Shown here: positions 19,418 through 52,079 of the stretch, one piece after another
Position numbering within the stretch: the stretch's first letter is position 1
Layout: each line of letters starts with the position of its first letter
Position numbers and translations under genes: made by a program
Notes under the pieces: generated by a model
The model's database searches: none
Told to the model about the DNA's origin: nothing
What the model saw: only the letters and a program-made list of their open reading frames with translations
NCBI GenBank assembly: GCA_030390025.1
Contig: CM059441.1
Span: 53,196,001 to 53,260,000, forward strand
DNA from: Squalus acanthias
Lineage: Eukaryota
Direction: 5' to 3'
Length of the DNA stretch: 64,000 bases

Positions 19418-22400
19418 TCGAGTGGCTGAATGGCCTCCTCCTGTTCCTATGTAACAGCCTTGAGGGGCTGAATGGCCTTTTCCTATTCCTAATCAACAGG
19501 CTCCAGTGGCTGAATGGCCTCCTCCTGTTCCTTTGTAATAGTTTTGAGGGGCTGAATGGCCTTCTCCTGTTCCTATGTAACAGCCTTGAGGGGCTGAATG
19601 ACCTCCTCCTGTTTCTATGCAGCAGGCTCGAGCAGCTGAATGTTGCAGCTCGTGTTCCCAAGTAACAGGCTCGAGGTTTTGAATGGCATCCACCTGATCC
19701 TATGTAACAGGCTCAAGTGGATGGAATGGGACTTCTCGTGTTCGTATGTAGCATCCTCGAGGGGCTGAATGGTCCTAATCCTGTTCCTATGTAACAGGCT
19801 TGAGAGGCTGAATAGCCTCCTCCTGTTCCTATGCAACATGCTCGAGGGGCTGAATAGCCTCCTCTTGTTCCTAAGTAGCAGGCTCAAGGGGCTGCTTGGC
19901 ATCCTTCAGTTCCTATGTAACAGGCTTGAGTGGCTGAAAGGCCTTCTCCTGATTTTTTCCAACAGGCTCGAGGGGCTGAATCATCTTGCACCTGTTCCTA
20001 TGCAACAGGCCTGAGGGGCAGAATGGCCTACTACTGTTCCTATGTAACAGGCTTCAGGGGCTAAATGGGCCTCCTCCTATTCATGTGCAACAGGCTCAAG
20101 TGGCTGAATGGTCTCTTCATGTTCCTATGTAACATGCTCGAGTGGCTGAATAGCCTCCTACTGTTCCTAAGTAGCAGGCTCAAGGGGTTCATTGGTATCC
20201 TTCAGTTCCTATGTAACAGGCTTGAGTGACTGAATGGCCTCCACCTGATCTTTTCTAACAGGCTCGAGGGGCTGAATCAGCTTGCACCTGTTCCTATGCA
20301 ACAGGCCTGAGGTGCTGAATGGCCTCCTCCTGCTCCTGTGTACTAGCCTCGTGTGGCTGAATGGCCGACTACTGTTCCTATGTAACAGGCTTGAGAGGCT
20401 AAATGGGCCTCCTCCTATTCGTGTGCAACAGGCTCGAGGGTTAGAATGGCCGAATCATGTTCCTAAGTAACAGGCTCGAGGTTCTGAATGGCCTTCTCCT
20501 GTTCCTATGTAAGAGGCTTGAGGGTTTGAATGGCCAAATCATGTTCCTATGTAACAGGCTCAAGGGGATGAATGGCCTCCTCCTGTTCCTAAGTAACAGG
20601 TTTGAGGGGCTGAAAGGGCCTCCTCGTGTTCATATGCAAGAGGCTCAAGGGGCTGAATGGCCTACTCCTGTTTCTATGTAACGGCTCGATGAGCTAAATG
20701 GCCTCCTCCTGTTCCCATGTAACAGGCTCGAGGTTCTGAAAGGCCTCCTCCATTTCTTATGCAACAGGCTCAAGTGGCTGAATAGCCTCCTCCATTCCTA
20801 TGTAACAGGCTTGAGGGGCTGAAAGGGCCTCCTCCTTTTCCTATGTAACAGGCTGAAGTGGCTGAATGGCCTCCTCCTGTTCCTATGGAACAGGCTTGAG
20901 GGGCTGAATGGTCTCCTCCTGTTCATATGCAACAGGCTTGAGGGGCTGAAAGCTCCTCCTCGTGTTCGTATGCAAGAGGCTCAAGGGGTTGAATGGCCTC
21001 ATCCTGTTTCTTTGGAATGGCTCGATGTACTAATTGGCCTCCTCCTGTTCCTATGTACAGGCTCGAGGTTCTGAATGGCCTCCTCCTGATCCTATGTAAC
21101 AGGCTCAAGTGGACGGAATGGGAATCCTTGTGTTCGTATGTAACATCCACGAGTGAACTGAATGGTCATACTCCTGTTCCTTTGTAACAGGCTCGAGGGG
21201 CTGAATGGCCTGCTCCTGTTCTTATGTAACAGGCTTGAGGGGCTGAATGGGCCACCTTCTCTTCTTCTGCATCAGGCTCGAGGGGCTGAATGGCCTCCTC
21301 ATGTTCCTATGTAACAGGCTCGAGGGGCTGAATGGCCTGCTCCTGTTCTAATGTAACAGGCTCGAGGGGCTGAATGGCCTCCTCTTTTTCCCATGTAACA
21401 GCTTCGAGGGGCAGAATGGCCTGTTCCTGTTCATATGTACCAGGATCAAGGGGTTAATCCTCCTGTTCCTATGTAGTCGGCTCGATTGGCTGAATGTGGC
21501 ACCTCCTGTTCCCATGAAACAACCTTGAGTATCTGAATGGCTTCCTCCTGATCCTATGTAGCGGGCTCAAGTGGACAGAATGGGAATCCTCATGTTCGTA
21601 TGTTACATCCTCGAGGGAGCTGAATGGACCTCCTTCTGTTCTTCTGCATCAGGCTCGAATGGTTGAATCGCCTCCTCTTTTTCCCATGTAACAGCCTCGA
21701 GGGGCAGAATGGCCTGTTCCTGTTCATATGTATCAGGTTAAGGGGATAAATGGCCTCCTCCTGTTTCAATGCAACAGGCTCTAGGGGCTGAATGAGCCTT
21801 CTCCTGTTCCAATGTAAAAGTCTCAAGTGGGCTGAATGGTCTCCTCCTGTTTCTATGTAACCGACTCAAGGGGCTGACTGGCCCTACTCCTGCTCCTATG
21901 CAACCAGCTCGAGTGACTGAACAACTGCCTCCTGTTACTAAGTTACAGACTCGAGTAGCTGAATGGTCCTGCTCCAGTTCCTATGTAACAGTATCGAGGG
22001 GCTGAATGGCCTCCTCCTTTTCCTATGTAACAGGCTCAATGGGATAATTGGCCTTAACCTATTCCTATGCCAAAGGCTTTAGGGGCTTAATGGACTACTC
22101 CTGTTCCTGTGTAACAGGCTCGAGAGGCTGAATTGCCTCCTATTATTCCTATGTAACAGGCTCGAGATGCTTATTGGGCCTACTCCTGTTCCTATACAAC
22201 AGGCTCGAGATGCTTATTGGGCCTACTCCTGTTCCTATACTACTGGCTCGAGAGGCTAAATGTCCTCCTCCTTTTGCTATGTAACATGCTCGAGGGGCTG
22301 AATAGCCTCCTCCTGCTCCAAAGTAGCAGGCTCAAGGGGCTAATCAGCATCCTTCAGTTCCTATGTAACAGGCTTCAGGGGCTGAATGGGCCTCCTCCTG

Positions 22401-22485
22401 TTCGTATGCAACAGGCTCCAGCGGCTGAATGGGCCTCCTCCTGTTCCTATGCTACTTGCTCGAGGGGCTGAATGGCCTCCTCCTG

Positions 22486-24852
22486 TTTTTTTTTAATTCG
22501 TTTATGGGATCGGGGTATCGCTGGCAATGCCAGCATTTATTGCCCATCCCTAGTTGCCCTTGAGAAGGTGGTGGTGAGCCGCCTTCATGAACCGCTGCAG
22601 TCCGTGTGGTGATGGTACTCCCACAGTGCTGTTAGGTAGGGAGTTCCAGGATTTTGACCCAGCGACGATGAAGGATCGGCGATATATTTCTAAGTCAGGA
22701 TGGTGTGTGACTTGGAGGGCAACTTGGAGGTGGTGGTGTTCTCATGCGCCTGCTGCCCTTGTCCTTCTAGGTGGAAGAGATCGCGGGTTTGGGAGGTGCT
22801 GCCGAAGAAGCCTTGGCGAGTTGCTGCAGTGCATCTTGTCGATGGTACACACTGCAGCCACGGTACGCCGGTGGTGGAGGCAGTGAATGTTTAAGATGTT
22901 GGATGGGGTGCCAATCAAGCGGGCACTTTGTCCTGGATGGTGTCGAGCTTCTTGAGTGTTGTTGGAGCTGCACTCATCCAGGCAAGTGGAGAATATTCCA
23001 TCACACTCCTTACTTGTGACTTGTAGTTGGTCGAAAGGCTTTGGGGAGACAGGAGGTGAGACACTCGCCGCAGAATACCTAGCCTCTGACCTGCTCTTGT
23101 TGCCACAGTATTTATGTGGCTGGTCCAGTTAAGTTTCTGGTTAATGGTGACCCCCAGGATGTTGACAGTGCGGGATTCGGCGATGGTAATGCCATTGAAT
23201 GTCAAGGGCAGGTGGTTAGACGCTCGCTTGTTGGAGATAGTCATTGCCTGGCACTTCTGTGGCGCGAATGTTACCTGCCACTTATCAACCCAAGCCTGAT
23301 CGTCGTCCAGGTCTTGTTCCATGCAGGCATGGACTGCTTCATTATCTGTGGAGTTGCGAATGGCGCTGAACACCGTGCAGTCATCAGCGAACATCCCCAT
23401 TTCTGACCTTATGCTGGAGGGAAGGTCATTGATGAAGCAGCTGAAGATGGTTGGGCCTAGGACACTGCCCTGAGGAACTCCTGCATCGATGTCCTGAGGC
23501 TGTGATGATTGACCTTCAACCACCACAACCATCTTCCTTTGTGCTAGGTATGAATCCAGCCAGTGGAGCGTTTTCCCCCTGATTCCCATTGACTTCAGCT
23601 TTAATAGGGCTCCTTGATGCCAGATTCGGTCAAATGCTGCCTTGATGTCAAGGGCAGTCACTCTCACCTCACCTCTGGAATCCAGCTCCTTTGTCCATGC
23701 TTGGACCAAGGCTGTAATGAGGTCGGGAGCCGAGTGGTTTTGGCGGAACCCAAACTGGGCATCAGTGAGCAGGTTATTGGTGAGTAAGTGCTGCTTGATA
23801 GCACTGTTGAAGACCCCTTCCATCACTTTGCTGATGATTGAGAGTAGACTGATGGGGTGGTAATTGACTGGGTTGGATTTGTCCTGCTTTTTGTGGCCAG
23901 GACAAACCTGGGCAGTTTTCCACATTGTCGGATAGATGCCAGTGTTGTAGCTGTACTGGATCAGCTTGGCTAGAGGCGCGGCTAGTTCTGGAGCACAAGT
24001 CTTCAGCACGATAGCCGGGATGTTGTCGGGGCCCATAGCCTTTGCTGTATCCAGTGTGCTCAGCCGTTTCTTGATATCACGTGGAGTGAATCGAATTGGC
24101 TGAATAATGGCTTCTGTGATGTTGGGGACCTCGGGAGTAGGCCGATATGAATCATCCACTCGGCACTTCTGGCTGAAGTTGGTTGCAAACGCTTCAGCCT
24201 TGTCTTTTGCACTCACGTGCTGAGCTCCACCATCATTGAGGATGGGGATAGTCTTGGAGCCTCCTCCTCCCGTTAGTTGTTAAATAGTCCACCACCATTC
24301 ACGACTGGATGTGGCAGGACTGCAGAGCTTTGATCTGATCCGTTGATTGTGGGATCGCTTAGCCCTGTCTGTAGCATGCTGCTTCCGCTTTTTAGCATGC
24401 ATGTAGTCCTGTGTTGCAGCTTCCCCAGGTTGGCACCTCATTTTTGGGAAAACCTGGTGCTGCTCCTGGCATGCTCTTCTATACTCGTTATTGAACCAGG
24501 GTTGGCCCCCTGGCTTGGTTGTAATGGTAGAGTGAGGGATATGCCGGGCCATGAGGTTACAGATTGTGGTGGAATACAATTCTGCTGCTGCTGATGGCCC
24601 ACAGCGCCTCATGGATGCCCAGTTTTGAGCTGCTAGATCTGTTCTGAATCTATCCCATTTAGCACGGTGGTAGTGCCACACAACACGATGGATGGTGTTC
24701 TCAGTGTGAAGACGAGACTTCGTCTCCGCAATGACTGTGCGGTGGTCACTGCTGTCAAAGCTATCATGGACAGATGCATCTGCAACAGGTAGATTGGTGA
24801 GGACGAGGTCAAGCAGGTTTTCCCTCTTGTTGGTTCATTCACCACCTGTCGC
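22486..24852 (-). mobile_element. Family B LINE, duplicate of 1051-3418
   Basis: Same junctions, offset 21434; ORF 22915-24216 differs from 1481-2782 by one residue (DDDQ vs DDYQ). Confidence 0.95.
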
Positions 24853-27800
24853 CTTTTCCAATTCCTAAGCAACAGGCTCCAGCAGCTGAATGGCCTCCTC
24901 CTATGCCTTCGTAACAGTTTTGAGGGGCTGAATGACCTCCTACTGTTCATATCTACCAGTTTCGAGGGGCTGAATGGGCACCTCGTGTTCCGATGGCACA
25001 GGCTCTAGGGGCTAAATAGCCTCCACTTGGTCCTATGTAACAGGCTCGAGGGGCTGAATGGGCTCCTCCTGTTTCTATATAACCGGCTCAAGGGGCTGAC
25101 TGGCGCTACTCCTGCTCCTATGCAAGCAGCTCGAGTGAATGAACAACTGCCTCCTGTTCCTAAGTTACAGACTCGAGGAGCTGTATGGTCCTCCTCCTGT
25201 TCCTATGTAACAGTCTCGAGGGTCTGAATGGCATCCTTCTTTTCCTATGTAACAGGCTCAATGGGATAATTGGCCTACTCCTATTCCTATGCAACAGGCT
25301 CTCGGGGCTTAATGGCCTCCTCCTGTTCCTGTGTAATAGGCTTGAGGGGCTGAATCGCCTCCTCTTCGTCCTTTGTAACAGGCTCGAGGGCTGAATGGGC
25401 CTCCTCCTGTTCCTATGAAACAGGCTCAAGATGCTTATTGGGCCTACTCCTGTTCCTATACAACTGGCTCGAGAGGCTTAATGGCCTCCTTCTGTTCCTA
25501 TGCAACATGCTCGAGGGGCTGAAAAGCCTCCTCCTGTTCCTAAGTAGCAGGCTCAAGGGGCTAATTGGCATCCTTCAGTTCCTGTGTAAATGGATTGAGG
25601 GGCTGAATGGGCCACCTCCTATTCCGATGCAATAGGCTTGAGGGGCTGAATGTCCTCCTCCTGATCTTTTCTAACAGGCTCGAGGGGTTGAATCAACTTC
25701 CACCTGTACCTATGCAACAGGCCTGAGGGGCTGAATGGCCTCCTCCTATTCCTGTGTAATAGATTCGAGGGGCTAAATGGCCTCCTCCTGTTCATTTGCA
25801 ACAGGCTCGAGGGTATGAATGGCCTACTCCTGTTTCTATGTAAGAGGCTCCAGTGGCTTAATGGCCTCCTCCTGTTCCTTCGTAAAAGTTTTGAGGGGTT
25901 GAATGGGCCTCCTCCTGTAAAGATACAACTTGCTCGACGGGCTGAATGGACTCCTCCTGTTCCTATGTAACAGCCTTGAGGGGCTGAATGACCTTCTCCT
26001 GTTCATATCTACCAGTTTCGAGGGGCTGAATGGCCTCCTCCTGATCCTATTTAACAGGCTCAAGTGGACAGATTGGGACTCCTCGTGTTCATATGTAACA
26101 TCCTCGAGGGAGCTGAATGGTCCTACTCCTGTTCCTATGTAACAGGCTCGAGGGGCTGAATGGCCTCCTCCTGTTCCTATGTAACAGGCTTGAGGGGCTG
26201 AATGGACCTCCTTCTGTTCTTCGGCATCAGGCATGAGGGGCTGAATGGCCTCCTGTTGTTCCCATGTAACAGGCTCAAGGGGCAGAATGGCCTGCTCCTG
26301 TTCATATGTACCCGGTTCAAGGGGATAAATGGCCTCCTCCTGTTTCTATGCAACAGGCTCTAGGGGCTGAATGGGCCTTCTCCTGTTCCGATGTAAAAGC
26401 TTCAAGTGGGCTGAATCGGCTCCTCCTGTTTCTATGTAACCAGCTCAAGGGACTGACTGGCCCTACTCCTGCTCCTATGCAACCAGCTCGAGTGACTGAA
26501 CAACTGCCTCCTGTTCCTAAGTTACAGACTCGAGGAGCTGAATGGTCCTCCTCCTATTCCTATGCAACACGCTCTAGGGGCTTAATGGCCTCCTCCTGTT
26601 CCTGTACAACTGGCTCGAGAGGCTTAATGGCCTCCTCCTGTTCCTATGTAGCAGGCTCAAGGCACTAATTGGCATCCTTCAGTTTCTATGAAACAGGCTT
26701 GAGGGGCTGAATGGGCCACCTCCTCTTCCGATGCAACAGTCTCGAGGGACTGAATGGCCTCCTCATGATCTTTTCTAACAGGCTCCAGGGGCTGAATCAG
26801 CTTCCACCTGTTCCTATACAACAGGCCTGAGGGGCTGAATGGCCTCCTCCTGTTCCTGTGTAATAGCCTCGAGGGGTTGAATGGCCTACTACTGTTTCTA
26901 TGTAACAGGCTTGAGGGGCAGAAAGGATCTGCTTCTGTTCTTCTGCATCAGGCTCGAGGGGCTTAATTGCCTTCTCTTTTTCCCATGTAATAGGCTCAAG
27001 GGGCAGAATGGCCGACTCCTGTTCATATGTACCAGGTTCAAGGGGATAAATGGCATCCTCCTGTTTCTTTGCAACAGTCTCGAGGGGCTGAATGGCCTCC
27101 TCTTTGTCCTTTGAAACATCTTGAGGGGCTGAATGGGCCTTCTCCTGTTCCTATATAAAAGCCTCAAGTGGGCTGAATGGGTTCCTCCTGTTTCTATGTA
27201 ACCGGCTCAAGGGACTGACTGGCCCTACTCCTGATCTTAAGCAACCAGCACGAGTGACTGAACAACTGCCTCCTGTTCCTAAGTTACAGACTCGAGGAGT
27301 TGCATGGACCTCCTCCTGTTCCTATGCAACAGGCTCAAGGGGCGAAATGGCCTGCTCCTGTTCCTATGTAACAGTCTCGAGGGGATGAATGGCCTCCTCC
27401 TTTTCCTATGTAACAGGCTCGATGGGATAATTAGCCTAATCCTATTCCTATGCAACAGGCTCTAGGGGCTTAATGTCCTCCTCTTGTTTCTGTGTAACAG
27501 GCTCGAGGGGCTGAATTACCTCCTCTTGGTCCTATTAACAGGCTCGAGAGCTGAATGGGCCTCCTCCTATTCCTGTGCAATAGGCTCGGCATGCTTATTG
27601 GGCCTACTCCTGTTCCTGTACAACTGGCTCGAGAGGCTTAATGGGCTCCTCCTGTTCCTATGCAACATGCTCGAGGGCCTGAATAGCCTCCTCCTGTTCC
27701 TAAGTAGCAGGCTCAAGGGGCTAATTGGCATCCTTCAGTTCCTATGTAACAGGCTTGCGGGGCTGAATGGGCCACCTCCTATTCCGATGCAGCAGGCCTG

Positions 27801-28086
27801 AGGGGCTGAATGGCCTCCTCATGTTCCTGTGTAATAGCCTCGAGGGGTTGAATGGCCTACTATGGTTCCTATGTAACAGGCTTGGGGGGCTGAATGGGCC
27901 TCCTCCTGTACATATGCAACAGACACGAGGGGCTGCATGGCCTCTTCCTGTACCTATGTAACAGGCTTGAGGGGCTGAAAGGCCCTCCTCGTGTTAGTAT
28001 GCAAGAGGCTCAAGGGGCTGAATTGCCTACATCTGTTTCAATGTAACGGCTCAATGGGCTAAATGGCCTCCTCCTGTTCCTATGTA

Positions 28087-28241
28087 CTCTTTTGATGGGT
28101 ACCAAAACAAATATCTGTAAATCAGTAAAACTCTAAAGGAAACTTAACAAATCAAATTAAAATTTGGTAGTCCGGGGTGACGATGCACTCCAGTCCCCGC
28201 GGCGCCCACCGGTCGCGGAAAAACTCAAGCGTGCCGGCGGA
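28087..28241 (-). mobile_element. 155-bp insertion, probably the 3' end of a Tx1-clade LINE
   Basis: Minus strand reads AGTLEFFRDRWAPRGLECIVTPDYQILI* then a T-rich UTR, resembling Tx1 ORF2 C-termini; CpG-rich, unlike the array; cctgttcctatgta on both sides. Confidence 0.65.
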
Positions 28242-40100: not shown

Positions 40101-40597
40101 ATGGGCTGAATTGCTTTCTCCTGTTCCTGTGTAACAGGCTTGAGGGGCTGAATTGCCTCCTCCTCATTCTATGTAACAGTCTCAAGGGGATAAATAGCCT
40201 CCTCCTGTTCCTATGTAACATCTCGAGGGGGCTGAATGGCCTCCTCCTGTTTCGATGTAATCGGCTTGAGGGGCTAAATGGGCATATTCCTGATCCTTTG
40301 CCACCAGCTCGGTGGACTGAACAACCGCCTCCTGTTCCAGAGTGACAGTCTCGACGAGATGAATGGTCCTCCTCCTGTTCCTATACAACAGCCTTGAGGA
40401 GCTCAATGGCCTCCTCTTGTTCCTATGTAACAGGCTTGCGGGGCTGAATGGGCTCCTTGTGTTCCTTTGCAACAGGCTCGAGGTTCTGAATGACCTCCTC
40501 CAGTTCAGATGTAACAGCGTCTTGGGGCTGAAGGGGCCTTCTGCTGTTCCTACACAACAGGCTCTAGGGGCTGATTGGCCTCCTCTTGTTCCTATGT

Positions 40598-41071
40598 CAC
40601 TATGTCCTGGACACCATCCAGGACAATGCAGGCCGCTTGATTGGCACCCCATCTACCACCTTAAACATTCACTCCCTCCACGCCCAGCGTACCGTGGCTG
40701 CAGTGTGTACCATCTACAAGATGCGCTGCAACAACTCGTCAATGCTTCTTCGGCAGCACCTCCCAAACCCGCAACCTCTTCCACCTACAAGGACAAGGGC
40801 AGCAGGCGCATGCGAAATGCACCACCTCCAAGTTCCCCTCCAAGTCACACACCATCCTGACTTGGAAGTATATCGCCGTTTCTTCATCGTCGCTGGGTCA
40901 AAATCCTGTAACATACTTCCGTTACAGCACTGTGGGAGCTCCTTCACCACACGGACTTCAGCGGTTCAAGAAGGCGGCTCACCACCACATTCTCAAGGGC
41001 AATTAGGGATGGGCAATAAATGCTGGCCTTGCCAGTGATGCCAGATCCTATGAAGGAATAAAGCAAAAAAA
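40598..41071 (+). mobile_element. Family B LINE 3' fragment, marker copy 3
   Basis: Same junctions as copy 1. Confidence 0.93.
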
Positions 41072-44000
41072 TGTAACAGGCTCGATTCAGCTAAATGGGC
41101 TCCTCCTTTATCTATGTTACAGGCTCAAGTTGCTGAATAGGTTCCTCCTGTTCATATGTATCATCCTCGAGGGGGCTGAATGGTCCTGTTCCTATGTAAG
41201 AGATGCGAGGGGCTGAACGGCCTCCTCCTGTTTCTGTGGAGAAGGCTCACGGGGCTAAATGGCCTCATCTTGTTCCTATGTAACAGGCTCACGGGTCTGA
41301 ATGGGCCTCCTCCTGCTCCTATGCAACAGGCCCATGGGGTTGAATGGCTGACTCCTGTTTCTATGTAAAAGGCTCGATGGGCTAATTGGCCAACTGCTGT
41401 TCCTATGTAACCAGCTTGAGGGGCTGAATGGCCATCTCCTGTTCCTTTGTAACAGCCTCGAGGAACTGAATGGTCTCTTCATGTTCATATGTAATAGGCT
41501 CGAGGGGATAAATGGGCCACCTCCTGGTCGTATGTAATAGGCTCGAGGGGCTGAATTACCTACTCCTGTTCCTATGCAATGGCCTCGAGGGGTTGATTGG
41601 CCTCCTCCTGTTCCTATGTAACAGGCTCAAGATGCTGAATGGTCTCCTCCTGGGCATCTGTAACAGAGTCAAGGGTGCGGAATGGGCCTCCTCCAGTTCA
41701 TATGTAACATCCTCGAGGGGGCTGAATGGACTCCTCCTGTTCATCTGTAACAGAGTCAAGGGGGCGGAATAGGCCTCCTCCTGTTATTATGCAACATCCT
41801 CGAGGGGTCTGAATGTGCTCCTTCTGTTCCTCTGTAACATGCTCAAGTAGCTGAATTGCCTACTCCAGTTCGTATGCAAAAGGCTCGAGGGGCTGAATGG
41901 GCTCCTCCTGTATCTATGTAATTGGCTCGAGGGGCTGAATGGCCTAATCATGTTCCTATGCAAGAAGCTTGAGGGATTTAATGGCCTCCTTCTGTTCCTT
42001 TGTAACAGTCTCAAGGAACTGAATGGTCTCTTCATGTTTGTATGTAACTGGCTCGAGGGGTTAATTGGCCTACTCCTGTACCTAAGCAACAGCCTTGCGG
42101 CAGTTGAATGGCCTCCTCCTGTTTCTATGTGACAGATTTAAGGGGATGAATGGACCTACTCCTGTTCCTGTGCAACAGGCTTGAAGTTCAGAATTGTCAC
42201 ATCCTGTTGCTATGTATCAGGCTCGAGTCGCTGATGGCCTCCTCCTGTTCCTATGTAACATGCTTGATGCGCTTAACAGCCTGCTCCTGTTCCTTCGTAA
42301 CAGTCTCGATGGGCTGAATGGGCCTCCTCCTGTTCCAATACAAAAAGCTCAAGGGGCTGAATGGCCGCCTCCTGTCGTTTTGTAACAGGTTTGAGGGGCT
42401 GAATGGCCCTCCTTCTGTTCCTATGTAACAGGCTCAAAGGGCTGAATGACATCCTGTTCCGAAGCAGCAGCTTCGAGGGGCTGAATGGGCCTCCTCCTGC
42501 TCCAATGCAACAGGATCAAGGGGCTGAATGTACTCTTCTAGTTCCTATGTAACAGTCTGCCTGACATCCTGTCGATGCAGCAGCTTCGAGGGGCTGAATG
42601 GGCCTCCTCCTGCTCCAATGCAACAGGATCAAGGGGCTGAATGGACTCTTCTAGTTCCTATGTAACAGTCTGCAGGGGCTGAATGGTCTCCTCCTGTTCC
42701 TTTGTAACAGTCTCAAGGGGATAAATGGCCTCCTCCTTTTCCTATGTAATCGGCTTGAGGGGCTTAATGGTCCTATTCCTGATCCTTTGCCACCAGCTGG
42801 AGGGACTGAACAACCACCTCCTGTTCCTGTGTGACATTCTCGACGAGATGAATGGTCCTCCTCCTGTTCCTATACAACAGGCTTGAGGGGCTGAATGGCA
42901 TCCTCCTGTTCCTGTGTTACAGTCTCGAGGGGCTGAATGGCCTCCTCATGTTCCTATGTAACAGGCTCGAGGGGCTGAATGGCCTCCTCATGTTCCTATG
43001 TAACAGGCTCGAGGGGCTGAATGGCCTCCAACAGTTAGTATGTTACAGCCTCAAAGGGCTGAATGTGAAGACTTATTTTCCTATGCAACAGGCACGAGGT
43101 TCTGAATGGCCTTCTCCTGTTCATATGTAACAGCCTCGTGGGGCTGAATGGCCTCCGCCTGTTCCTTTGCCACAGCTTCGAGGGGCTGAATGGCCTGTTC
43201 ATTTAACTTTGCAACAGGTTTGAGAGGCTGAATGGCCTCCTCCTATTCCTTTGTAACAGTGTCGAGGGGCTGAATTGCCTTCTCCTCTTCCTGTGTTACC
43301 GTGTCGAGGGGCTGAATTGCCTTCTCCTCTTCCTGTGTAACAGTTTCGAGGGGCTGAATTGCCTTCTCCTCTTACTGTGTAACAGGCCTGAGGGGCTGAA
43401 TTGCCTCCTCATCATCCTATGTAACAGGCTCATGGGGATAAATGGCCTCCTCCTGTTCCTATGTAACAACTCGAGAGGTCTGAATAGCCTCCTCCTGTCT
43501 CTATGTAAACGGCTTGAGGGGCTAAATGGGCCTACTCCTGGTCCTTGCCAGCTCGAGGGACTGAACAACTGCCTCCTGTTCCTGTGTGACAGTCTCGACG
43601 AGATGAATGGTCCTCCTCCTGTTCCTATACAACAGGCTTGAGGGGCTGAATGGCCTCCTCCTGCTCCTGTGTTACAGTCTCAAGGAACTGAATGGTCTCT
43701 TCATGTTTGTTCTTAACAGGCTCAAGCGGCTGATTGGCATTCTCCTGTTCATATGCAGCAGTCCCAAATGGCAGAATAGCCTGTTTAGCAGGCTCGATGG
43801 GATAAATGGCCACCTCCTGGTCCTATGTAAAAGGCTCGAGTTGCTGAATGGCCTCTTCCTGTTTCAACATAATGGGCTTGACGGGCTGAATAGCCTCCTC
43901 CTATTCCTATGTAACAGGCTCGAATGGCCTTATGGGCCTCGTCCTGTTCCTTTGTAACATTCTAGAGGGGATGAATGGCTTCCTCCTGTTTCTATGTAAA

Positions 44001-45260
44001 AAGTTTGAGGGCCTGAATGGCCTCCTCCTGTTCCTATGCAACAGGCACAAAGGGCTGAATGGACTACTCCTGTTCCAATGCAACAGGCTCGAGGGACTTT
44101 ATTGGCCTCCACCTTTTCCAATGCATCAGGCTCAAGGGAAAGTATGTACTCCTCCTGTCCCTTTGTAACAGTCTTGAGGGCTTGAAAGACCTCCTCCTGT
44201 TCCTAAGTAACAAGTGCGAGGGGCTGAATGGGCCTTCTTCTGTTCCTATGTAACAGGCTCAAAGGGCTGAATGACATCCTGTTTGTATGCAGCACGTTCG
44301 AGGGCTGAATGGGCCTCCTCCTGTTCCAATGCAACCAGATCAAGGGGCTGAATGAACTCTTATAGTTCCTATGTAACAGTCTGGAGGGGCTGAATGGTCT
44401 CCTCCTGTTCCTTTGTAACAGTCTCGAGATGCTTATTGGGCCTACTCCTGTTCCTATACAATTGGCTCGAGAGGCTTATAGGCCCCCGCCTGATCATGAG
44501 TACCAGGCTCAAAGGCTGAATGGGCCTCCTCCTTTTCCAATGCAACAGGCCCGAGGGGCTGAATGGCCTTCTCCTGTTCCTATGTAACAGGCTCGATGGG
44601 CTAAATGGTCACCTCCTGTTCTTATGTACAGGCTCGAGGGGTTGAATGGCCTCCTGCTGTTTATATGTAACGGGCTCGAGGGGTTGAATGGGCCGTCACC
44701 TGTTTCTATGCAACAGGCACTAGGGGCTGAATGGCCTGTTCCTGTCCCTTTGTAACATTCTCGAGGGGCTGAATTGCTTTCTCCTCTTCCTGTGTAACAG
44801 GCTTGAGGGGCTGAATTGCCTCCTCCTCATTCTATGTAACAGTCTCAAGGGGATAAATGGCCTCCTCCTGTTCCTATGTAACATCTCGAGGGGGCTGAAT
44901 GGCCTCCTCCTGTTTCTATGTAATCAGCTTGAAGGGCTAAATGGCCCTACTCCTCATCCTTTGCCAACAGCTCGATGGACTGAACAACCGCCTCCTGTAC
45001 CTGTGTGACAGACTCGACGAGATGAATGGTCCTCCTCCTGTTCCTATACAACAGGCTTGAGGAGCTCAATGGCCTCCTCTTGTTCCTATGTAACAGGCTT
45101 GCGGGGCTGAATGGGCTCCTCGTGTTCCTTTGTAACTGGCTCGAGGTTGTGAATGGCCTCCTCCAGTTCAGATGTAACAGCGTCTTGGGACTGAAGGGGT
45201 CTTCTGCTGTTCCTACGCAACAGGCTCTAGTGGCTGATTGGCCTCCTCTTGTTCCTATGT

Positions 45261-45432
45261 CACTATGTCCTGGACACCATCCAGGACAATGCAGGCCGCT
45301 TGATTGGCATCCCATCCACCACCTGAAACATTCACTCCCTCCACCCCCAGCATACCGTGGCTGCAGTGTGTTCCATCTACAAGATACGCTGCAACAACTC
45401 GTCAAGGCTTCTTCGGCAGCACCTCCCAAACC
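45261..45432 (+). mobile_element. Family B LINE 3' fragment, marker copy 4 (3' part deleted)
   Basis: Same 5' junction; ends at cacctcccaaacc and rejoins the satellite. Confidence 0.9.
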
Positions 45433-48400
45433 TTCTCTTCATGTTCATATGTAACAGTCTCGAGGGGCTGAATGGGCCTTCTCCTGTTCCTATGTAACAG
45501 GCCCAAATGGCAGAATGGCCTGTTTAGCAGGCTCGGTGGGCTAAATGACCAGCTCCTGGTCCTATGTAAAAGGCTTGAGGGGCTGAATTGCCTACTCCTG
45601 TTCCTATGCAACAGCCTCGAGCGGTTGATTGGCCTGCTCCTGTTCCTATGTAACAGGCTCAAGATGCAGAATGGTCTCTTCCTGGTCATCTGTAACAGAG
45701 TCATGGTTGTCCCCTGTTTCAATGTAACTGGCTCGAGCGGCTGAATCAGCCTACTTCTGTTCCTATGCAACAGGCTCGAGGGGCTGAATCAGCCTACTTC
45801 TGTTCCAATGCAACAGGATCAAGGGGCTGAATGGACCCTTCTCGTTCCTTTGTAACAGCCTGGAGGGGCTGAATGGTCTCCTCCTGTTTCTTTCTAACAT
45901 TCTCGAGATGCTTATTGGGCCTACTCCTGTTCCTAAAGAACTGGCTCGAGAGACTTAATGGCCCCCTCCTGATCATGTCTACCAGGCCCGAAGGCCTGAA
46001 TGGGCCTCCTCCTTTTCCGATGCAACAGTCCCGAGGGGCTGGATGGCCTTCTCCTTTTCCAATGTAACAGGCTCGATGCGCTAAATGGTCACCTCCTCTT
46101 CTTATGTACAGGCTTGAGGGGTTGAATGGCCTCCTCCTGTTTCAATGTAACGGGCTCAATGGGCCTACACGTGGTCCTATGCAACAGGTTCTCAGGGCTG
46201 AATGGCCTCCTCCTGTCCCTTTGTAACAGTCTTGAGGCGCTGAATGGCCTCCTCTTTGTTCCTATGTAACAGGCTCAAGCGGCTGAATTGGGCGCCTGCT
46301 ACTTGTATGCATCAGGCCCTAAGGGCTGAATGGCCTGTGTAACTGGATCAAAGGTATGAATGGCCACCTCCTGTTCCGATGTAAAATGTTTGAGGAGCTG
46401 AATGGCCTCCTCCTGTTCATATGCCACAGCTTCGAGGGGCTGAATGGCCTGTTACTTTTCCTATGCAACAGGTTCGAGGGGCTGATTGGCCTCCTCCTGT
46501 TCCTATGCAACAGGCTCAAGATGCTGAATGGTCTCCTCCTGGGCATCTGTAACAGAGTCAAGGGTGTGGAATGGGCCTCCTCCAGTTCATATGTAACATC
46601 CTCGAGGGTGCTGAATGGCCTCCTCCTGTTCCTCTGTAACAGAGTCAAGGGGGCAGAATAGGCCTCCTCCTGTTATTATGCAACATCCTCGAGGGGTCTG
46701 AATGTCCTCCTTCTGTTCCTCTGTAACAGGCTCAAGTAGCTGAATTGCCTACTCCTGTTCTTATGCAAAAGCCTCGATGGGCTGAGTGGTCTGTTACTGT
46801 GCAACAGGTTCGACGGGCTGTATGGCCTCCTCCTGATCCTTTGTAACAGTCTCAAGGGGTTAAATGGCCTCCTGCTGTTCCTATGTAAATGGCTCGAGTG
46901 GGGCTGAATGGCCTCCTCCTATATCTATGTAATTGGCTCGAGGGGCTAAATGGCATTCTCCTGTTCCTACAAAGCAGGCTCAATGTGCTGAATGACATCC
47001 TGTTCCTATGCAACAGGCTCAAGATTCTGAATGGGCCTCCTCCTATTTCTATGCAACAGGCCCATGGGGCTGAATGGCCTACTCCTGTTTCTATGTAACA
47101 GGCTCGAGGGGCTGAATGGCCTAATCATGTTCCTATGTAAGAAGCTCGGGGGATTTAATGGCCTCCTCCTGTTCCTTTGTAGCATTCTCGAGGAACTGAA
47201 TGGTCTCTTCATGTTCGTATGTAACAGGCTCGAGGGGTTAATTGGCCTCCTCCTTTTCCTAAGCAACAGGCTTGCAGTAGCTGAATGGCCTCTTCCTGTT
47301 TCTATGTGACAGATTTAAGAGGATGAATCGAACTACTCCTGTTCCTATGCAAAAGGATTGAAGTTCAGAATTGTCTCCTCCTGTTGCTATGCATCAGGCT
47401 CGTGTCGCTGATGGCCTCCTCCTGTTCCTATGTAACAGGCTTGATGCGCTGAACGGCCTCCTCCTGTTCCTCTGTAACAGTCTCGAAGGGTTGAATGGGC
47501 CTCCTCCTGTTCCAATGCAACAGGATCAAGGGGCTGAATGGACTCTTCAAGTTCCTATGTAACAGTCTGCAGGGGCTGAATGGTCTCCTCCTGTTCCTTT
47601 GTAACAGTCTCAAGGGGATAAATGGCCTCCTCCTGTTCCTATACAACTGGCTCGAGAGGCTTATTGGCCCCCTCCTGATCATGAGTACCAGGCTCGAAGG
47701 GCTGAATGGGCCTCCTCCTTTTCCAATGCAACAGGCCCGAGGGGCTGAATTGCCTTCTCCTGTTCCTATGTAACAGACTCGATGGGCTAAATGGCCAACT
47801 CTTGTTCTTATGTACAGGCTCAAGGGGTTGATTGGCCTCCTCCTGTTCCTATGGAACAGGCTTGAGGCGCAGAACGGCCTCCTCATTTTCCTTCGTAACA
47901 GTCTCGAGGGGCTGAATGCGCCTCCTCCTGTTCCAATACAACAGGCTCAAGGGGCTGAATGGACTCCTCCTGTCGCTTTGTAACAGTCTTGATGGCCTGA
48001 AAGGCCTCCTCCTGTTCTAAAGTAACAGGTTGGAGGAGCTGAATGGGCCTTCTTCTGTTCCTATGTAACAGGCTCAAAGAGCTGAATGCCATCCTGTTCC
48101 GATGCAGCAGGTTCGAGGGGTTGAATGGGCCTCCTCCTGTTCCAATGCAACAGGATCAAGGGGCTGAATGGACCCTTCTCGTTCCTTTGTAACAGCTTGG
48201 AGGGGCTGAATGGTCTCCTCCTGTTTCTTTCTAACATTCTCGAGATGCTTATTGGGCCTACTCCTGTTCCTCAAGAACTGGCTCGAGAGACTTAATGGCC
48301 CCCTCCTGATCATGTGTACCAGGCCCGAAGGCCTGAATGGGCCTCCTCCTTTTCCGATGCAACAGTCCCGAGGGGCTGGATGGCCTTCTCCTTTTCCAAT

Positions 48401-49181
48401 GTAACAGGCTCGATGCGCTAAATGGTCACCTCCTCTTCTTATGTACAGGCTTGAGGGGTTGAATGGCCTCCTCCTGTTTCAATGTAACGGGCTCAATGGG
48501 CCTACACGTGGTCCTATGCAACAGGTTCTCAGGGCTGAATGGCCTCCTCCTGTCCCTTTGTAACAGTCTTGAGGCGCTGAATGGCCTCCTCTTTGTTCCT
48601 ATGTAACAGGCTCAAGCGGCTGAATGGGGCGCCTGCTACTTGTATGCATCAGGCCCTACGGGCTGAATGGCCTGTGTAACTGGATCAAAGGTATGAATGG
48701 CCACCTCCTGTTCCGATGTAAAATGTTCGAGGAGCTGAATGGCCTCCTCCTGTTCATATGCCACAGCTTCGAGGGGCTGAATGGCCTGTTACTTTTCCTA
48801 TGCAACAGGTTCGAGGGGCTGATTGGCCTCCTCCTGTTTCTATATAATCGGCTTGAGGGGCTAAATGAGCCTACTCCTGATCCTTTGCAACCAGCTCGAG
48901 GGTCTGAACAACCACCTCCTGTTCGTGTGTGACAGTCTCGACGAGATGAATGGTCCTCCTGTTCCTATACAACAGGCTTGAGGGGCTGAATGGGCTCCTC
49001 GTGTTCCTATGCAATAGTCTCGAGGGGCTGAATGGCCTCCTCCTGTTCCTTTGTAACAGGCCCGAGTTTCTGAATGGCCTCCTCCAGTTCAGATGTAACA
49101 GCGTCGTGGGGCTGAAGGGGCCGTCTCCTGTTCCTACGCAACTGGCTCAAGGGGCTGATTGGCCCCCACTTGTTCCTATGT

Positions 49182-49651: not shown

Positions 49652-50115
49652 TGTTTCAGGCTCGAGTCAACTAAAGGAGCTCCTCCTGTTCCTATGAAAC
49701 AGACTCAAGTTGCTGAATGGTCTCCTCCTGTTCATCTGTAACATCCTCGAGGTGGCTGAATGGTCCTGCTCCTGTTCTGATGTAAGAGGCGCGAGGTGCT
49801 GAACGGCTTCCTCTTGTTTCTGTGGAGCAGGCTCACGGAGCTAAATGGCCTCATCTTGTTCCTATGTAACAGGCGCGAGGGTCTGAATGGCCTACTCCTG
49901 TTCCTGTGCAACAGGCCCATGGGGCTGAATGGCCTAATCATGTTCCTATGTAACAAGCTCGAGGGAGTTAATGGCCTCCACCTGTTCCATTGTAACAGTC
50001 TCGAGGAACTGAATGGTCTCTTCATGTTCGTATGTAACAGGCTCGAGGGGCTGAATGGCCTTCTCTTGTTCCTATGCAACAGGCTTGAGGGGCTGAATGG
50101 GTCTCCTCCTGTTCC

Positions 50116-50449
50116 TTGGCTAGAGGCGCGGCTAGTTCTGGAGCACAAGTCTTCAGCACGACAGCTGGGATGTTGTCGGGGCCCACAGCCTTTGCTGTAT
50201 CCAGTGTGCTCTGCCATTTCTTGATATCATGTGGAGTGAATTGAAATGGCTGAAGACTGGCTTCTGTGGTGGTGGGGACTTCAGGAGGAGGCCAATATGG
50301 ATCATCTACTTGGTATTTCTGGTTGCAAACGCTTCAGCTTTGTCTTTTGCTGGGCTCCACCATCATTGTGGATGGAGATATTCATGGAGCCTCCTCCTCC
50401 CGTTTGTTCTTTAATGGTCCACCATCATTCACGACTGGATGTGGCAGGA
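50116..50449 (-). mobile_element. Internal fragment of family B ORF2 embedded in the satellite
   Basis: ttggctagaggcgcggctagttctggagcacaagtcttcagcacg...ggatgtggcagga matches 2532-2885. Confidence 0.9.
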
Positions 50450-52079
50450 ACAATGTGTTGAATGGCCACCTCTTGTTCCTATGTAGCAGGCTAAAGGGGC
50501 TAAACAGTCTCCTCTTGTTTCTATGTTGCTATACAACAGGCCCGAGGGGCTGAATGGGCCTACTCCTGTTCCTATGCAACAGGATCAAGGAGGTGAATGG
50601 CCTCCTCTTGTTACTATGTAGCAGATTTAAGGGGCTAAATGGTCTCCTCTTGTTTCTATGTAACAGATTCAAGGGGCTAAATGGCCGAATCATGTTCCTA
50701 TGCAACAGTCACGAGATGCTTATTGGGCCTCCTCTTGTACCTTTGTAACAGGTTCAAGGAGCTAAATGGCCTCCTCCTGTTCCTATGTAACATGCTCGAG
50801 GGACTGATGAGCCTTCTCCTGTTCCTATATAACAGGCCCGAGGGGCTGAATGGACTACTCCTGTTTCTATGTTACAGGCTTGATGATTGGCCAACAGCTG
50901 TTCCTTTGTAACAGGCTCGAGGGGCTGAATGCACTAATCATGTTCCTATGTAACAGGCTCGAGGAGGCTGAATGGCCTACTCTTGTTCCTGTGCAACAGG
51001 CTCAAGGGTCTGAATGGCCTCCTCCTGTTCCTTTATAACAGTCTCGAGGGACTGAATGGGCCTCCTCCTGTTCTTATGCCACAGGCCCGAAGGGCTGAAT
51101 GGCCTGTGTAATAGGCTCAATTGGCTAAACGGCCACCTCCTGTTCCTATGTAAAAGGCTCGAGGGGCTGTATGGCCTCCTCCTGTTCTTCTGTAACAGTC
51201 TAGAGACGGTTAATTGCCTCCTCCTGTTCCTATGCAACAGCCTCGAGAGGCTGAATTTTCTGTTCCTATGCAACAGGTTCGAGGGGCTGAATGGCCTTCC
51301 CCTCTTCCAGTGTATCAGGCTCGAGGGACTGAATGGCTTCCTCCTTATCCTATGTAACAGGCTCAAAGGGATAAATGGCCACCTCCTGTTTCTATGAAAC
51401 TGGCTCGAGGAGCTAAATGGGCCTACTCCTGATCCTATGCAACAGGCTCGAGGGACTGAACAACCGCCTCCTGTTCCTATGTTATAGACTCGACGAGATG
51501 AATAGCCCTTCTCCTGTTCCTATGTTATAGACTCGACGAGATGAATAGCCCTTCTCCTGTTCCTATGCAACAGGTTCGAGGGTATGAATGGGCTCTTCTT
51601 GTTCCTATGTAGCAGGTTCAAGATGCTGAATGTGAAGCCTCCTGTTCCCATGCAACAGGTTTGAGGCTCTGAATGGATTCCTGCTGTCCTTATGCAACAG
51701 GCTCAAGGCAGCTGAATGGCCTCCTCCTGTTTCTACGTTAACAGGCTTGAGGGGCTGAATGGCCTCCTCCTTTTCCTATGTACAGGCTCGAGGGGCTGAA
51801 TGGCTTAACATGTTCCTATGCAGCAGGCTCGATGGGCTGAATAGCCTCCTCCTGTTTCTATGTAACGGGCTCAAGGGGCTGAATGGGCCTACTACTGTTC
51901 CTATGCAACAGGCTTGAGATGCTTATTGGGCCTCCTCCTGTTGCTATGTAACAGCCTCGAGAGGGCTGAATGGGCCTCCTCCTGTTCCTAAGTAAAGAAG
52001 GACTGAAATACTTGCATTTGGATAACACCTTGCATTCCTATAGGACCCTGAAATGAGCTTCCGACCGCATAACAACGAC

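What the first reader, a model, noticed from the sequence alone, without database searches (positions are those of the whole stretch)
19418..51995. A satellite built from the CR1 LINE 3' recognition stem-loop
Seen: the 42-bp monomer aacaggctcgaggggctgaatggcctcctcctgttcctatgt aligns with CR1 tails in this window. The reverse complement of 4904-4965 reads agcaggctcgaggggcagattggtctactcctgctcctattt. The solo tail at 10125-10193(-) has the monomer form itself (gaacaggctcgagggttgaatggcctcctcctgttcc) behind normal CR1 3' UTR. Each monomer keeps a hairpin whose outer stem covaries with the LINE (aacagg/cctgtt vs agcagg/cctgct). The window contains n=1 (10125, 53540), n=2 (4904-5101), n~9 (11818-12191) and n=hundreds. 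Established: CR1/L2 reverse transcriptases recognise a 3' stem-loop and initiate at the terminal repeats, and SINEs hijack that tail. Inference: the array was seeded by reiterated reverse transcription or slippage on the tail and then expanded by unequal exchange. Any sense transcript would be a polymer of RT-binding sites, so it could act as a retro-mobile satellite or as an ORF2p decoy.
Basis: partly seen in the sequence, partly recalled or inferred. Interest (0 to 1): 0.85.

Follow-up and report, generated by a model that had tools for sequence, protein, structure and literature searches.

The report
Shark satellite made from CR1 tail hairpin
A 42-letter repeat that fills almost half of this cartilaginous-fish window is an amplified copy of the hairpin at the 3' end of the resident CR1 jumping gene, an ordinary route to satellite DNA that here shows no sign of a retained function.

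Summary
The 42-bp satellite is real. There are about 700 monomers covering about 29.5 kb of the 64-kb window. All are on the + strand except one 9-copy array.

The monomer matches the 3' hairpin tails of CR1 LINEs in the window. All 8 tails tested beat 1000 shuffles, and the best is 38/40 identical. Public contigs of the same organism run from CR1 3' UTR straight into the monomer form. Derivation from the CR1 tail is well supported.

The main array abuts, in sense orientation, a CR1 ORF2 fragment on its 5' side. It ends at a unit end. This fits in-situ amplification of one CR1 copy's tail, but it is only one case.

The array later grew by multi-kb DNA duplications that carry TE insertions as passengers.

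The hairpin is not maintained. Only 96 of 495 distinct monomers keep the outer stem, and pairing and compensation are no better than shuffles. The A-U/G-C "covariation" lies between CR1 subfamilies, not within the satellite.

The decoy and retro-mobile ideas are untested and disfavoured. This is a new member of the known kind "TE-derived satellite". Earlier unchecked notes of this scan report the same satellite on other DNA of this genome.

The parts
19418..22487 (+). 42-bp satellite, first block of the main array (about 73 monomers). It starts at monomer position about 8.
   Evidence: TRF; sequence
24862..49181 (+). 42-bp satellite, main body (about 578 TRF copies). It is interrupted by insertions at 28088-28243, 32405-32923, 33795-34798, 36686-37204, 40598-41117 and 45261-45525. 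It holds multi-kb internal duplications.
49680..50116 (+). 42-bp satellite block (10 copies)
50524..51995 (+). 42-bp satellite, last block (35 copies). The array ends at a unit end, that is, hairpin plus six bases.
23..6235 (+). Second copy of part of the array (satellite at 23-1052, 3428-4895 and 5908-6235) with the same two LINE insertions. It is 94.6-99.8% identical to 21436-26336 plus 32877-35129.
11818..12193 (-). Separate short array of about 9 monomers on the other strand. A LINE-X 3' end abuts its 5' side. Its 3' side ends at a unit end.
19148..19414 (+). CR1 ORF2 C-terminal fragment in the same sense as the array, ending 3 bases before the first monomer. Residues 178-244 of the ORF and the 3' UTR are missing.
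   Evidence: translation; tblastn E 1e-08
4904..5907 (-). 5'-truncated CR1 inserted into the array, antisense to it. It has an intact 244-aa ORF2 C-terminus (5102-5836) and two 3' UTR-tail units of about 98 bp (4904-5101). The duplicate lies at 33795-34798.
10121..10193 (-). Solo, heavily 5'-truncated CR1 3' end whose hairpin is 38/40 identical to the satellite monomer.
17340..18097 (-). CR1 copy with a G-C stem tail and terminal octamer repeat
54651..55235 (-). CR1 copy with a G-C stem tail
61767..62269 (-). CR1 copy of another subfamily. Its tail is still 32/40 identical to the monomer.
10391..10432 (-). CR1 tail of that other subfamily with two terminal octamers. The ORF2 end is joined directly to the hairpin by an internal deletion.
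53546..53587 (+). Single monomer-like unit (35/41) with no CR1 UTR before it. It shares about 50 nt of 3' flank with the 9-mer array.
22488..24870 (-). Unrelated non-LTR element ('LINE-X', RVT_1, A-rich tail) inserted into the array. Copies lie at 1053-3436 and 12192-14291. Its 3' pieces on the + strand at 32405-32923, 36686-37204, 40598-41117, 45261-45432 and 49182-49697 mark a higher-order unit of about 4 kb.

Best explanation
The 42-bp repeat is a satellite DNA that descends from the 3' terminal module of a CR1-clade LINE. That module is the 37-nt hairpin plus the first five bases of the terminal microsatellite. The source was a subfamily whose outer stem carries A-U where other subfamilies carry G-C.

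Most likely (inferred), one 5'-truncated CR1 copy, of which 19148-19414 is the remnant, had its tail duplicated in place. The array then grew at the DNA level by unequal exchange and multi-kb segmental duplication. Along the way it picked up insertions of CR1, another LINE and other elements.

The monomers now drift without constraint on the hairpin. The array is best read as neutral, probably methylated, repetitive DNA rather than as a working polymer of RT-binding sites.

Shown: homology to CR1 tails; DNA-level duplication with passengers; lack of stem maintenance.
Inferred: which copy was the founder, and how the first duplication arose.
For: Homology:
- The monomer matches 8 of 8 tails, and 0 of 1000 dinucleotide shuffles reach any observed score. 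Identities are 38/40 (10121), 35/41, 33/38, 33/38, 30/36, 27/33, 32/40 and 32/41.
- Outside the arrays, 9 of the 10 hits at 24/42 or better lie at CR1 3' ends. Seven of these are independent copies.

CR1 identity:
- The ORF at 5102-5836(-) finds 1506 proteins among 2066 candidates. They include elasmobranch RT or 'jockey'-named proteins at 66-74% identity and bird and turtle RT proteins at 47-53%.
- The tails carry an 8-bp stem and terminal octamer repeats, as described for CR1 (PMC8665684 passages).

The tail is the older sequence: it is shared by diverged CR1 subfamilies.

Public contigs: contigs that match a monomer continue upstream into CR1 3' UTR. Counts are 112 in X1, 24 and 9 in X6, and 28 in X20 (table 7).

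Array edges:
- A sense CR1 ORF2 fragment ends at 19414.
- Sense CR1 C-terminal sequence covers only about 6% of the non-satellite bases (2217 bases).
- Both independent arrays end at a unit end.

DNA-level growth: there are duplications of 1.5-4.9 kb at 92-97% identity. TE passengers are copied at 89-99.8%.

Neutral decay:
- Mean identity to the consensus is 76%.
- The CpG in the monomer is its most transition-prone dinucleotide: C to T in 21% and G to A in 22% of monomers.
- Stem cells are paired in 78.8% against 78.7% in shuffles.
Against: - The founder reading rests on one junction. About 200 bp of ORF and the whole UTR are missing between the CR1 fragment and the first monomer.
- The CR1 fragment is only 42% identical in protein to the CR1 copy used as query. 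It may belong to another subfamily than the tail.
- The 9-copy array has no CR1 body next to it.
- The only complete CR1 3' end touching the array is antisense and is an insertion.
- The nearly identical copy at 1-6241 could be an assembly duplication.
- No genome-wide count of array edges could be made.
- Whether the array is transcribed is unknown.
Confidence: 0.78

Rival explanations
1. The array was seeded by the CR1 reverse transcriptase itself. This could be repeated priming or template jumping on the tail during target-primed reverse transcription, or successive insertions of extremely 5'-truncated copies into the previous copy's microsatellite. DNA-level slippage would then not be the first step. 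Later growth by unequal exchange is the same as in the best explanation.
For: - The unit is exactly the module at which CR1 is thought to start reverse transcription (PMC8665684).
- The arrays end at a unit end, like a retrotransposed 3' terminus.
- One CR1 copy carries two complete tail units in tandem, about 98 bp each and of different divergence. This looks like tail-onto-tail addition.
- The linker keeps a microsatellite-like sequence.
Against: - No intermediate with two or three 42-bp units behind a CR1 UTR was seen in the window.
- The tandem tail in the CR1 copy has a different period.
- The same end products arise from replication slippage.
- Old, diverged monomers keep no trace of the first step.
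Confidence: 0.2
2. The CR1 fragment beside the array is not the founder. The adjacency would be chance, or it would come from CR1 inserting by preference into an existing array whose linker resembles its own microsatellite.
For: - CR1 is dense here: 5.3 kb of C-terminal ORF2 matches lie in about 34 kb of non-satellite DNA.
- Four of four independent TE insertions into the array hit the linker, monomer positions 31-43. The array therefore attracts LINE endonucleases.
- The fragment lacks its own 3' end.
Against: - A fresh insertion would bring an intact 3' tail, and this one has none.
- Sense orientation, the exact abutment and the unit-end finish at the far side together have a chance of roughly 0.06 x 0.15. 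This is my estimate.
Confidence: 0.35
3. Functional reading of the first reader: sense transcripts of the array act as a polymer of RT-binding hairpins. They would either titrate CR1 ORF2p (decoy) or be reverse-transcribed in trans, which would make the satellite retro-mobile.
For: - The consensus monomer folds into the CR1-type hairpin at -14.5 kcal/mol.
- LINEs of the stringent type recognise their 3' end, and shark SINEs borrow CR1-type tails (PMC3747384 passages and table).
- A run guessed to be RNA holds contigs with monomer-monomer joints (table 5c).
- Unchecked notes of this scan report the satellite on other pieces of the genome.
Against: - The outer stem is intact in only 96 of 495 distinct monomers, fewer than the 106.6 +/- 6.1 of column-permuted sets.
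- Mean folding energy is no better than permuted sets, -9.03 against -9.19.
- Compensatory cells number 70 against 62 +/- 6.7, and 67 of 500 shuffles reach that.
- Growth is by DNA segments with TE passengers.
- No holder of the stretch is on record as RNA.
- The short array shows no target-site duplication that could be read.
Confidence: 0.05
4. The likeness runs the other way or is convergent: a CR1 lineage captured its tail from the satellite, or both merely share a GC-rich palindrome.
For: None specific. LINEs are known to exchange 3' ends (general knowledge, not checked here).
Against: - The tail is shared, with the same upstream UTR, by at least three diverged CR1 subfamilies and follows a CR1 ORF2 in each.
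- The hairpin plus octamer is the conserved CR1 hallmark in amniotes too.
- The match extends over 38-41 bases, far above shuffles.
Confidence: 0.03

Closest known systems
CR1 LINE 3' structure (hairpin plus 8-bp microsatellite), as described for amniote CR1 (Suh 2015, cited in PMC8665684; passages read)
   Same: The tails in this window follow a CR1-type ORF2 end. They have an 8-bp stem with compensatory change between subfamilies and end in octamer repeats. One subfamily ends in two copies of the same octamer that the paper gives for birds.
   Different: The host is a cartilaginous fish. The satellite keeps only the hairpin and five linker bases, not the UTR or the repeated octamer.
Chicken HinfI repeat containing CR1 3' UTR and part of ORF2 (Li and Leung 2006; seen only as cited in the review PMC9659126, passages and table)
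   Same: It is a tandem repeat whose unit derives from the 3' region of a CR1 element.
   Different: By the review's description that unit embeds a larger CR1 piece, including coding sequence. Here the unit is 42 bp and equals the terminal hairpin module alone. The original paper was not read.
Common cetacean satellite related to the L1 3' terminal part, and other TE-derived satellites (review PMC9659126)
   Same: It is a satellite born from the 3' end of a LINE and then amplified by DNA-level mechanisms.
   Different: It comes from a different LINE clade. L1 is of the 'relaxed' poly(A) type, so its 3' end is not a specific RT recognition hairpin (PMC3747384).
SINEs that borrow CR1-type LINE tails in sharks and rays (HE1/HER1, SacSINE1; table in PMC3747384)
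   Same: The same LINE module is reused by a non-autonomous sequence.
   Different: SINEs carry a promoter-bearing head and a single tail and disperse by retroposition. Here there is no head, there are hundreds of tails in tandem, and the growth is by DNA duplication.
Chicken CNM / PO41 41-42-bp satellites with dyad symmetry and higher-order repeats (PMC9974502 passages; probe sequence printed in bioRxiv 10.64898/2026.03.19.712899)
   Same: The unit length is nearly the same. Both have an internal dyad, divergent monomers and multi-kb higher-order structure.
   Different: By eye the printed 27-nt CNM probe shows no likeness to the shark monomer. No alignment was run, because that sequence is not from this window. 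I treat the likeness in length as coincidence.

Membership tests
CR1-clade LINE 3' end (for the dispersed tails) | Lies directly 3' of an ORF2 with a CR1-type C-terminus | tested here: met
   tblastn with the 244-aa ORF finds CR1 C-terminal matches upstream of the tails at 4923, 17340, 54651 and 61767. The ORF matches elasmobranch, bird and turtle RT proteins. The tails at 10121 and 10391 keep only UTR or a deleted ORF end.
CR1-clade LINE 3' end (for the dispersed tails) | Inverted repeat forming a hairpin just before the terminus | tested here: met
   Across 9 sequences, 88.9% of cells in the 8-bp outer helix are paired. Whole-structure pairing is 83.5% against 47-59% in slid controls. One pair reads A-U in 5 and G-C in 4, with none broken.
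CR1-clade LINE 3' end (for the dispersed tails) | Terminal microsatellite, typically an octamer | tested here: met
   Two to three octamer repeats follow the hairpin at 4904(-), 17340(-) and 10391(-). The octamer is described in PMC8665684.
CR1-clade LINE 3' end (for the dispersed tails) | Recognition of the tail by the element's reverse transcriptase | not testable with these tools
TE-derived satellite DNA | Long head-to-tail arrays of a defined monomer | tested here: met
   TRF finds 42-bp arrays with 578, 73, 35, 35, 24, 10, 9 and 8 copies. Spacing between monomers is 42 in 427 cases and 43 in 160.
TE-derived satellite DNA | Monomer homologous to a segment of a dispersed TE beyond chance | tested here: met
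   8 of 8 tails score above all 1000 shuffles.
TE-derived satellite DNA | The TE segment is the older state | tested here: met
   The tail is shared by diverged CR1 subfamilies with a common UTR. Many CR1 UTR-to-hairpin contigs occur in public runs. No rooted tree was made.
TE-derived satellite DNA | Physical continuity between an array and its parent element | tested here: inconclusive
   A sense CR1 ORF2 fragment ends 3 bases before the array, but about 200 bp of ORF and the UTR are missing. This holds for one of two independent arrays.
SINE-like retro-mobile element using a LINE tail | Promoter-bearing head and dispersed copies flanked by insertion hallmarks | tested here: inconclusive
   No head is seen at either array. 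The 9-copy array has a LINE inserted at one end, so flanks cannot be compared. Its 3' flank is shared with the solo unit at 53546 for about 50 nt. That points to a larger repeated unit rather than an insertion boundary.
RT decoy / sponge RNA | The binding structure is kept under selection in the repeats | tested here: not met
   96 of 495 outer stems are intact, against 106.6 +/- 6.1 in permuted sets. Pairing is 78.8% against 78.7%.
RT decoy / sponge RNA | Sense-strand transcription | not testable with these tools
   No holder is on record as RNA. Contigs cannot show strand or level.

The most novel reading that the evidence does not exclude
CR1 reverse transcriptase itself concatenates its recognition hairpin at insertion. 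The resulting arrays, when transcribed in sense, would be taken up again by the enzyme. The satellite would then spread between chromosomes as a retro-mobile tandem repeat and at the same time soak up ORF2p. If so, a LINE would generate its own competitor, and several CR1-derived satellites noted in this genome would share that origin.
Probability: 0.06. Interest if true: 0.8.

Novelty: new member of a known kind. Interest (0 to 1): 0.4.

Why it matters
This is a clean, sequence-level example of a satellite whose unit is the terminal recognition module of a 'stringent' LINE and nothing else. A plausible parent copy is still attached to it.

It helps repeat annotation of large elasmobranch genomes. 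Such arrays will otherwise be masked as thousands of CR1 fragments or left unclassified.

It also gives a testable case for how LINE tails seed tandem repeats, and it shows that LINE endonucleases keep hitting the linker of the derived satellite. It does not, on present evidence, reveal a new function.

Tried and rejected
- Rfam at gathering thresholds on the whole window gave 0 matches, so no curated LINE 3' element model fits.
- Pfam on the CR1 C-terminal ORF found nothing. The identification came from the protein search instead.
- I looked for selection on the hairpin inside the array in three ways: pair counts with shuffles, compensatory cells, and folding energy against column-permuted sets. 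All were negative.
- I tested whether the 9-copy array and the solo unit at 53546 are paralogous sites of a large duplication. Only about 100 bp align at 77%, so this stays unexplained.
- I tested whether the 33-bp tandem repeat at 62744-63174 derives from the neighbouring tRNA-type SINE. The score was 14 against a shuffle maximum of 16, so I rejected it.
- I considered that the avian 41-bp CNM repeat might be a CR1-hairpin satellite too. The probe printed in a preprint shows no likeness by eye, so I dropped the idea. No alignment was run.
- A shift-identity profile for higher-order periods gave only weak long-range peaks. blastn self-comparison was more useful.
- The LINE that is inserted in the array ('LINE-X') could be named no closer than 'non-LTR RT'.
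- Searches for a published description of this satellite returned none: CR1 + satellite DNA + shark; satellite DNA, elasmobranch, tandem repeat and LINE, at least 3 of the 4 terms; shark + satellite + 42 bp. The library lacks most subscription journals. Supplements were closed and I did not open them. The satellite unit tables of shark genome papers, for example the supplementary tables and figures of PMC11406177, might list this repeat.
- A by-sequence look-up in the scan's own notes was blank.

Full report
**What is in the window.** Tandem Repeats Finder reports 42-bp arrays at 19418-22487 (72.7 copies), 24862-49181 (578 copies), 49680-50116 (10 copies) and 50524-51995 (35 copies).

An ungapped scan with the consensus gives 625 forward hits at 24/42 or better. 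Of these, 565 lie in 19418-51995, one at its edge, 58 in 1-6250 and one at 53546. There are 18 reverse hits. A shuffled window reaches at most 23/42. Neighbouring monomers are 42 bases apart in 427 cases and 43 in 160. The 635 monomers of 40-45 nt are on average 76% identical to the consensus. By my sum of the TRF spans minus the insertions, the satellite takes about 29.5 kb of the 64 kb. The window has no N.

**The tails really are CR1 tails.** The 1-kb element at 4904-5907 on the minus strand carries an open 244-codon frame. Pfam does not name it. A search of 5.8 billion proteins gave 1506 hits at E of 0.001 or better among 2066 candidates. They include RT-domain and 'jockey'-named proteins of skates, rays and sharks at 66-74% identity, and RT proteins of ducks, geese, plovers and a soft-shell turtle at 47-53% over more than 90% of the query. 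These are lineages whose abundant LINE is CR1, which is general knowledge and is also stated in the abstract of PMC4316615 (listing).

tblastn with this ORF finds further C-terminal ORF2 pieces on both strands. Behind four of them (4923, 17340, 54651, 61767, all minus) lies the same arrangement. A short UTR with a conserved motif comes first; that motif has 6 matches against 0.74 expected. Then comes an 8-bp-stem hairpin, and then octamer repeats. This is the 3' structure described for CR1: a hairpin plus an 8-bp microsatellite, proposed to be the RT recognition site (PMC8665684, passages).

Across nine tails, 83.5% of stem cells pair, against 47-59% when the partner is slid. One pair reads A-U in five sequences and G-C in four with none broken. 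The covariation score exceeds all but 11 of 500 shuffles. RNAalifold predicts the same outer helix.

**Monomer against tails.** Local alignment of the consensus to eight tails gave these identities:
- 38/40 (10121)
- 35/41 (53546)
- 33/38 (4923)
- 33/38 (17340)
- 30/36 (54651)
- 27/33 (inner unit at 5023)
- 32/40 (61767)
- 32/41 (10391)

None of 1000 dinucleotide shuffles of the monomer reached any of these scores. The nearest tail, 10121-10193(-), is a genuine CR1 3' end, because the 40 nt before its hairpin align with the UTR of the other copies. The monomer covers the hairpin from its base and five further bases. Those five correspond to the first bases after the hairpin in the tails. Because the tail, with its UTR, is shared by CR1 subfamilies that have diverged from each other, the LINE tail is the older state and the satellite the derived one.

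**Evidence from public runs.** The stretch 17800-21000 is held by DNA runs of a coded organism A (share 0.57-0.60) and, in part, by runs labelled with other organisms. I laid contigs of four runs on it. The commonest 'loose end' in front of a monomer is CR1 3' UTR running into the A-U form of the hairpin. This was seen in 112 contigs in X1 at one place, 24 and 9 in X6, and 28 in X20 (table 7). CR1 3' ends with the monomer-form hairpin are therefore numerous in the genome.

Contigs that join non-adjacent monomers show that the repeat is tandem elsewhere as well, in X1 and X6, with one case in X8 (table 5). Contigs of X6 and X8 cover parts of the CR1 fragment left of the array with 6-12 differences (table 8). 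Whether the array follows there cannot be read from short contigs. X20 is only guessed to be RNA, and contigs show neither strand nor level, so transcription remains open.

**Architecture and history.**
- The main array starts at 19418 at monomer position about 8.
- Directly before it, on the same strand, lies a CR1 ORF2 fragment. Residues 126-177 of the 244-aa query align to 19259-19414 (42% identity, E 1e-08), and the frame can be followed back to 19148. The remaining 67 codons and the UTR are absent.
- Sense-strand CR1 C-terminal sequence covers 2217 bases of about 34.5 kb of non-satellite DNA. A chance abutment therefore has a probability of about 6%.
- The far end of the array, at 51995, falls at a unit end. 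So does the 3' end of the separate 9-copy array.
- An ORF2-to-hairpin deletion junction also exists in an ordinary CR1 copy at 10391(-), between two short direct repeats. Such deletions do happen here.
- Taken together this fits one CR1 copy whose tail was amplified in place. It is one locus, though, and I give the founder reading about even odds.

**Growth.** The array holds passengers:
- A non-LTR element with an RVT_1 domain and an A-rich tail ('LINE-X') lies at 22488-24870.
- The antisense CR1 lies at 33795-34798.
- A 155-bp insert with a 13-bp target duplication lies at 28088-28243.
- A 0.5-kb LINE-X 3' piece is present five times (32405, 36686, 40598, 45261, 49182) at 89-96% mutual identity and 3.9-4.7 kb spacing.

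Segments of 1.5-2.1 kb recur at 92% identity. The first 6.2 kb of the window repeat 21436-26336 plus 32877-35129 at 94.6-97%, with both LINE insertions at 99.7-99.8% and about 6.5 kb less satellite between them. This is the signature of unequal exchange and segmental duplication of DNA, not of reverse transcription. An assembly duplication cannot be excluded for the youngest copy.

**The hairpin in the satellite.** The consensus folds at -14.5 kcal/mol into the CR1-type hairpin. The individual monomers do not maintain it. Among 495 distinct monomers:
- 78.8% of stem cells pair, against 78.7 +/- 0.2% when partners are shuffled (140 of 500 shuffles reach the observed value).
- Double changes that keep a pair number 70, against 62 +/- 6.7 (67 of 500 shuffles reach that).
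- All six outer pairs are intact in 96 monomers, against 106.6 +/- 6.1 in column-permuted sets.
- Mean folding energy is -9.03 against -9.19 +/- 0.08 kcal/mol.

The single CpG in the monomer is its most transition-prone dinucleotide (C to T in 21%, G to A in 22%), as expected for methylated, unconstrained DNA. The satellite inherited one state.

- n=1 at 10121 is a true solo CR1 tail.
- n=1 at 53546 is a lone unit without CR1 UTR. It is abutted by the head of a tRNA-type SINE on the other strand (my reading). It shares about 50 nt of 3' flank with the 9-copy array, which I cannot explain.
- n=2 at 4904-5101 is two copies of the whole UTR-plus-tail unit of about 98 bp, the inner one more diverged. 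It lies in an element that is an antisense insertion into the array.
- n of about 9 is a real 42-bp array whose 5' side is occupied by a LINE-X insertion.
- The series is therefore not a growth series.

**Mechanism and rivals.** Shown: homology to the CR1 tail, DNA-level amplification and neutral decay. Inferred: in-situ origin at the CR1 copy at 19148-19414, after a deletion that may have used the likeness between the ORF sequence at the junction and the 5' arm of the hairpin (by eye).

The first duplication could equally have been made by the reverse transcriptase, through re-priming or template jumping on the tail. The tandem 98-bp tails hint that tail-onto-tail addition occurs. I found no 42-bp intermediate and give this 0.2.

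The decoy or retro-mobile reading gets 0.05. Nothing supports selection on the structure, and no RNA evidence is available.

The reverse direction, a LINE capturing a satellite, gets 0.03.

**Comparison with what is known.** Satellites born from TEs are well documented. They include one from the 3' part of L1 in cetaceans and a chicken repeat that embeds CR1 3' UTR and part of ORF2 (review PMC9659126, passages and table; the original papers were not read). Stringent 3'-end recognition by LINEs and tail-sharing SINEs in sharks and rays are reviewed in PMC3747384 (passages and table). My three searches for this satellite in print found nothing, with the limits stated under Tried and rejected. 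I file it as a new member of a known kind. Its particular feature is that the unit equals the terminal recognition module alone.

**Earlier notes of this scan.** Unchecked first-reader notes report the same idea 33 kb upstream of this window. They also report a 42-bp macrosatellite alternating with CR1 3' fragments on another piece, and several other CR1-derived satellites in this genome. I could not test them. If true, they mean that the phenomenon is recurrent in this genome, and that the scan has found this before on other DNA.

**Limits.**
- Only one window was available.
- The species is not known to me beyond 'cartilaginous fish, probably an elasmobranch'.

Noticed in passing
window 1053, 4904, 28088-28243, 40598-41075 (and their duplicates): All four independent TE insertions into the satellite sit in the same 13-nt linker part of the monomer (consensus positions 31-43). 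One has a 13-bp target duplication and one a 4-6-bp target duplication. The uniform chance is about 0.009. The AT-richer linker, a remnant of the CR1 microsatellite, seems to be a preferred endonuclease target.
   Followed up: partly
window 10391-10460 (-) compared with 61767-61900 (-): In one CR1 copy the end of ORF2 is joined straight to the tail hairpin. About 100 nt are missing between two short direct repeats, which is a microhomology deletion inside a CR1 3' region.
   Followed up: partly
window 11764-11823 (-) and 53581-53640 (+): The 9-copy array and the solo unit share about 50 nt of sequence directly after the last unit. A 19-nt pattern from this shared flank matches both sites with no mismatch, against 0.08 expected matches. 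The larger repeat that would contain both was not identified.
   Followed up: partly
window 6228-8471 (+): A 747-aa open frame has weak RVT_1 and GIY-YIG matches (both below the Pfam cut-offs). It is a Penelope-like element that starts where the first satellite copy breaks off. Other notes of the scan mention hammerhead motifs just downstream (8755-9081).
   Followed up: no
window about 10470-10620 (+): A short exon-like stretch reads like the end of an immunoglobulin V-type domain (by eye). A scan note mentions an Ig-superfamily receptor system elsewhere in this genome.
   Followed up: no
window 58157-58598: A young 29-bp tandem repeat with 15 copies at 96% matches, unrelated to the 42-bp satellite.
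   Followed up: no
window 62744-63174: A 33-bp tandem repeat (13 copies, 82% matches). A suspected origin from the tRNA-type SINE at 53100-53545 was not above shuffles.
   Followed up: yes
window 1-6241 versus 21436-26336 and 32877-35129: A near-identical second copy of part of the array (94.6-99.8%) has about 6.5 kb less satellite. It is either a very recent segmental duplication or an assembly duplication.
   Followed up: partly
window 52060-53090 (+): An L2-type LINE 3' region (C-terminal motif read by eye) directly follows the end of the main array.
   Followed up: no
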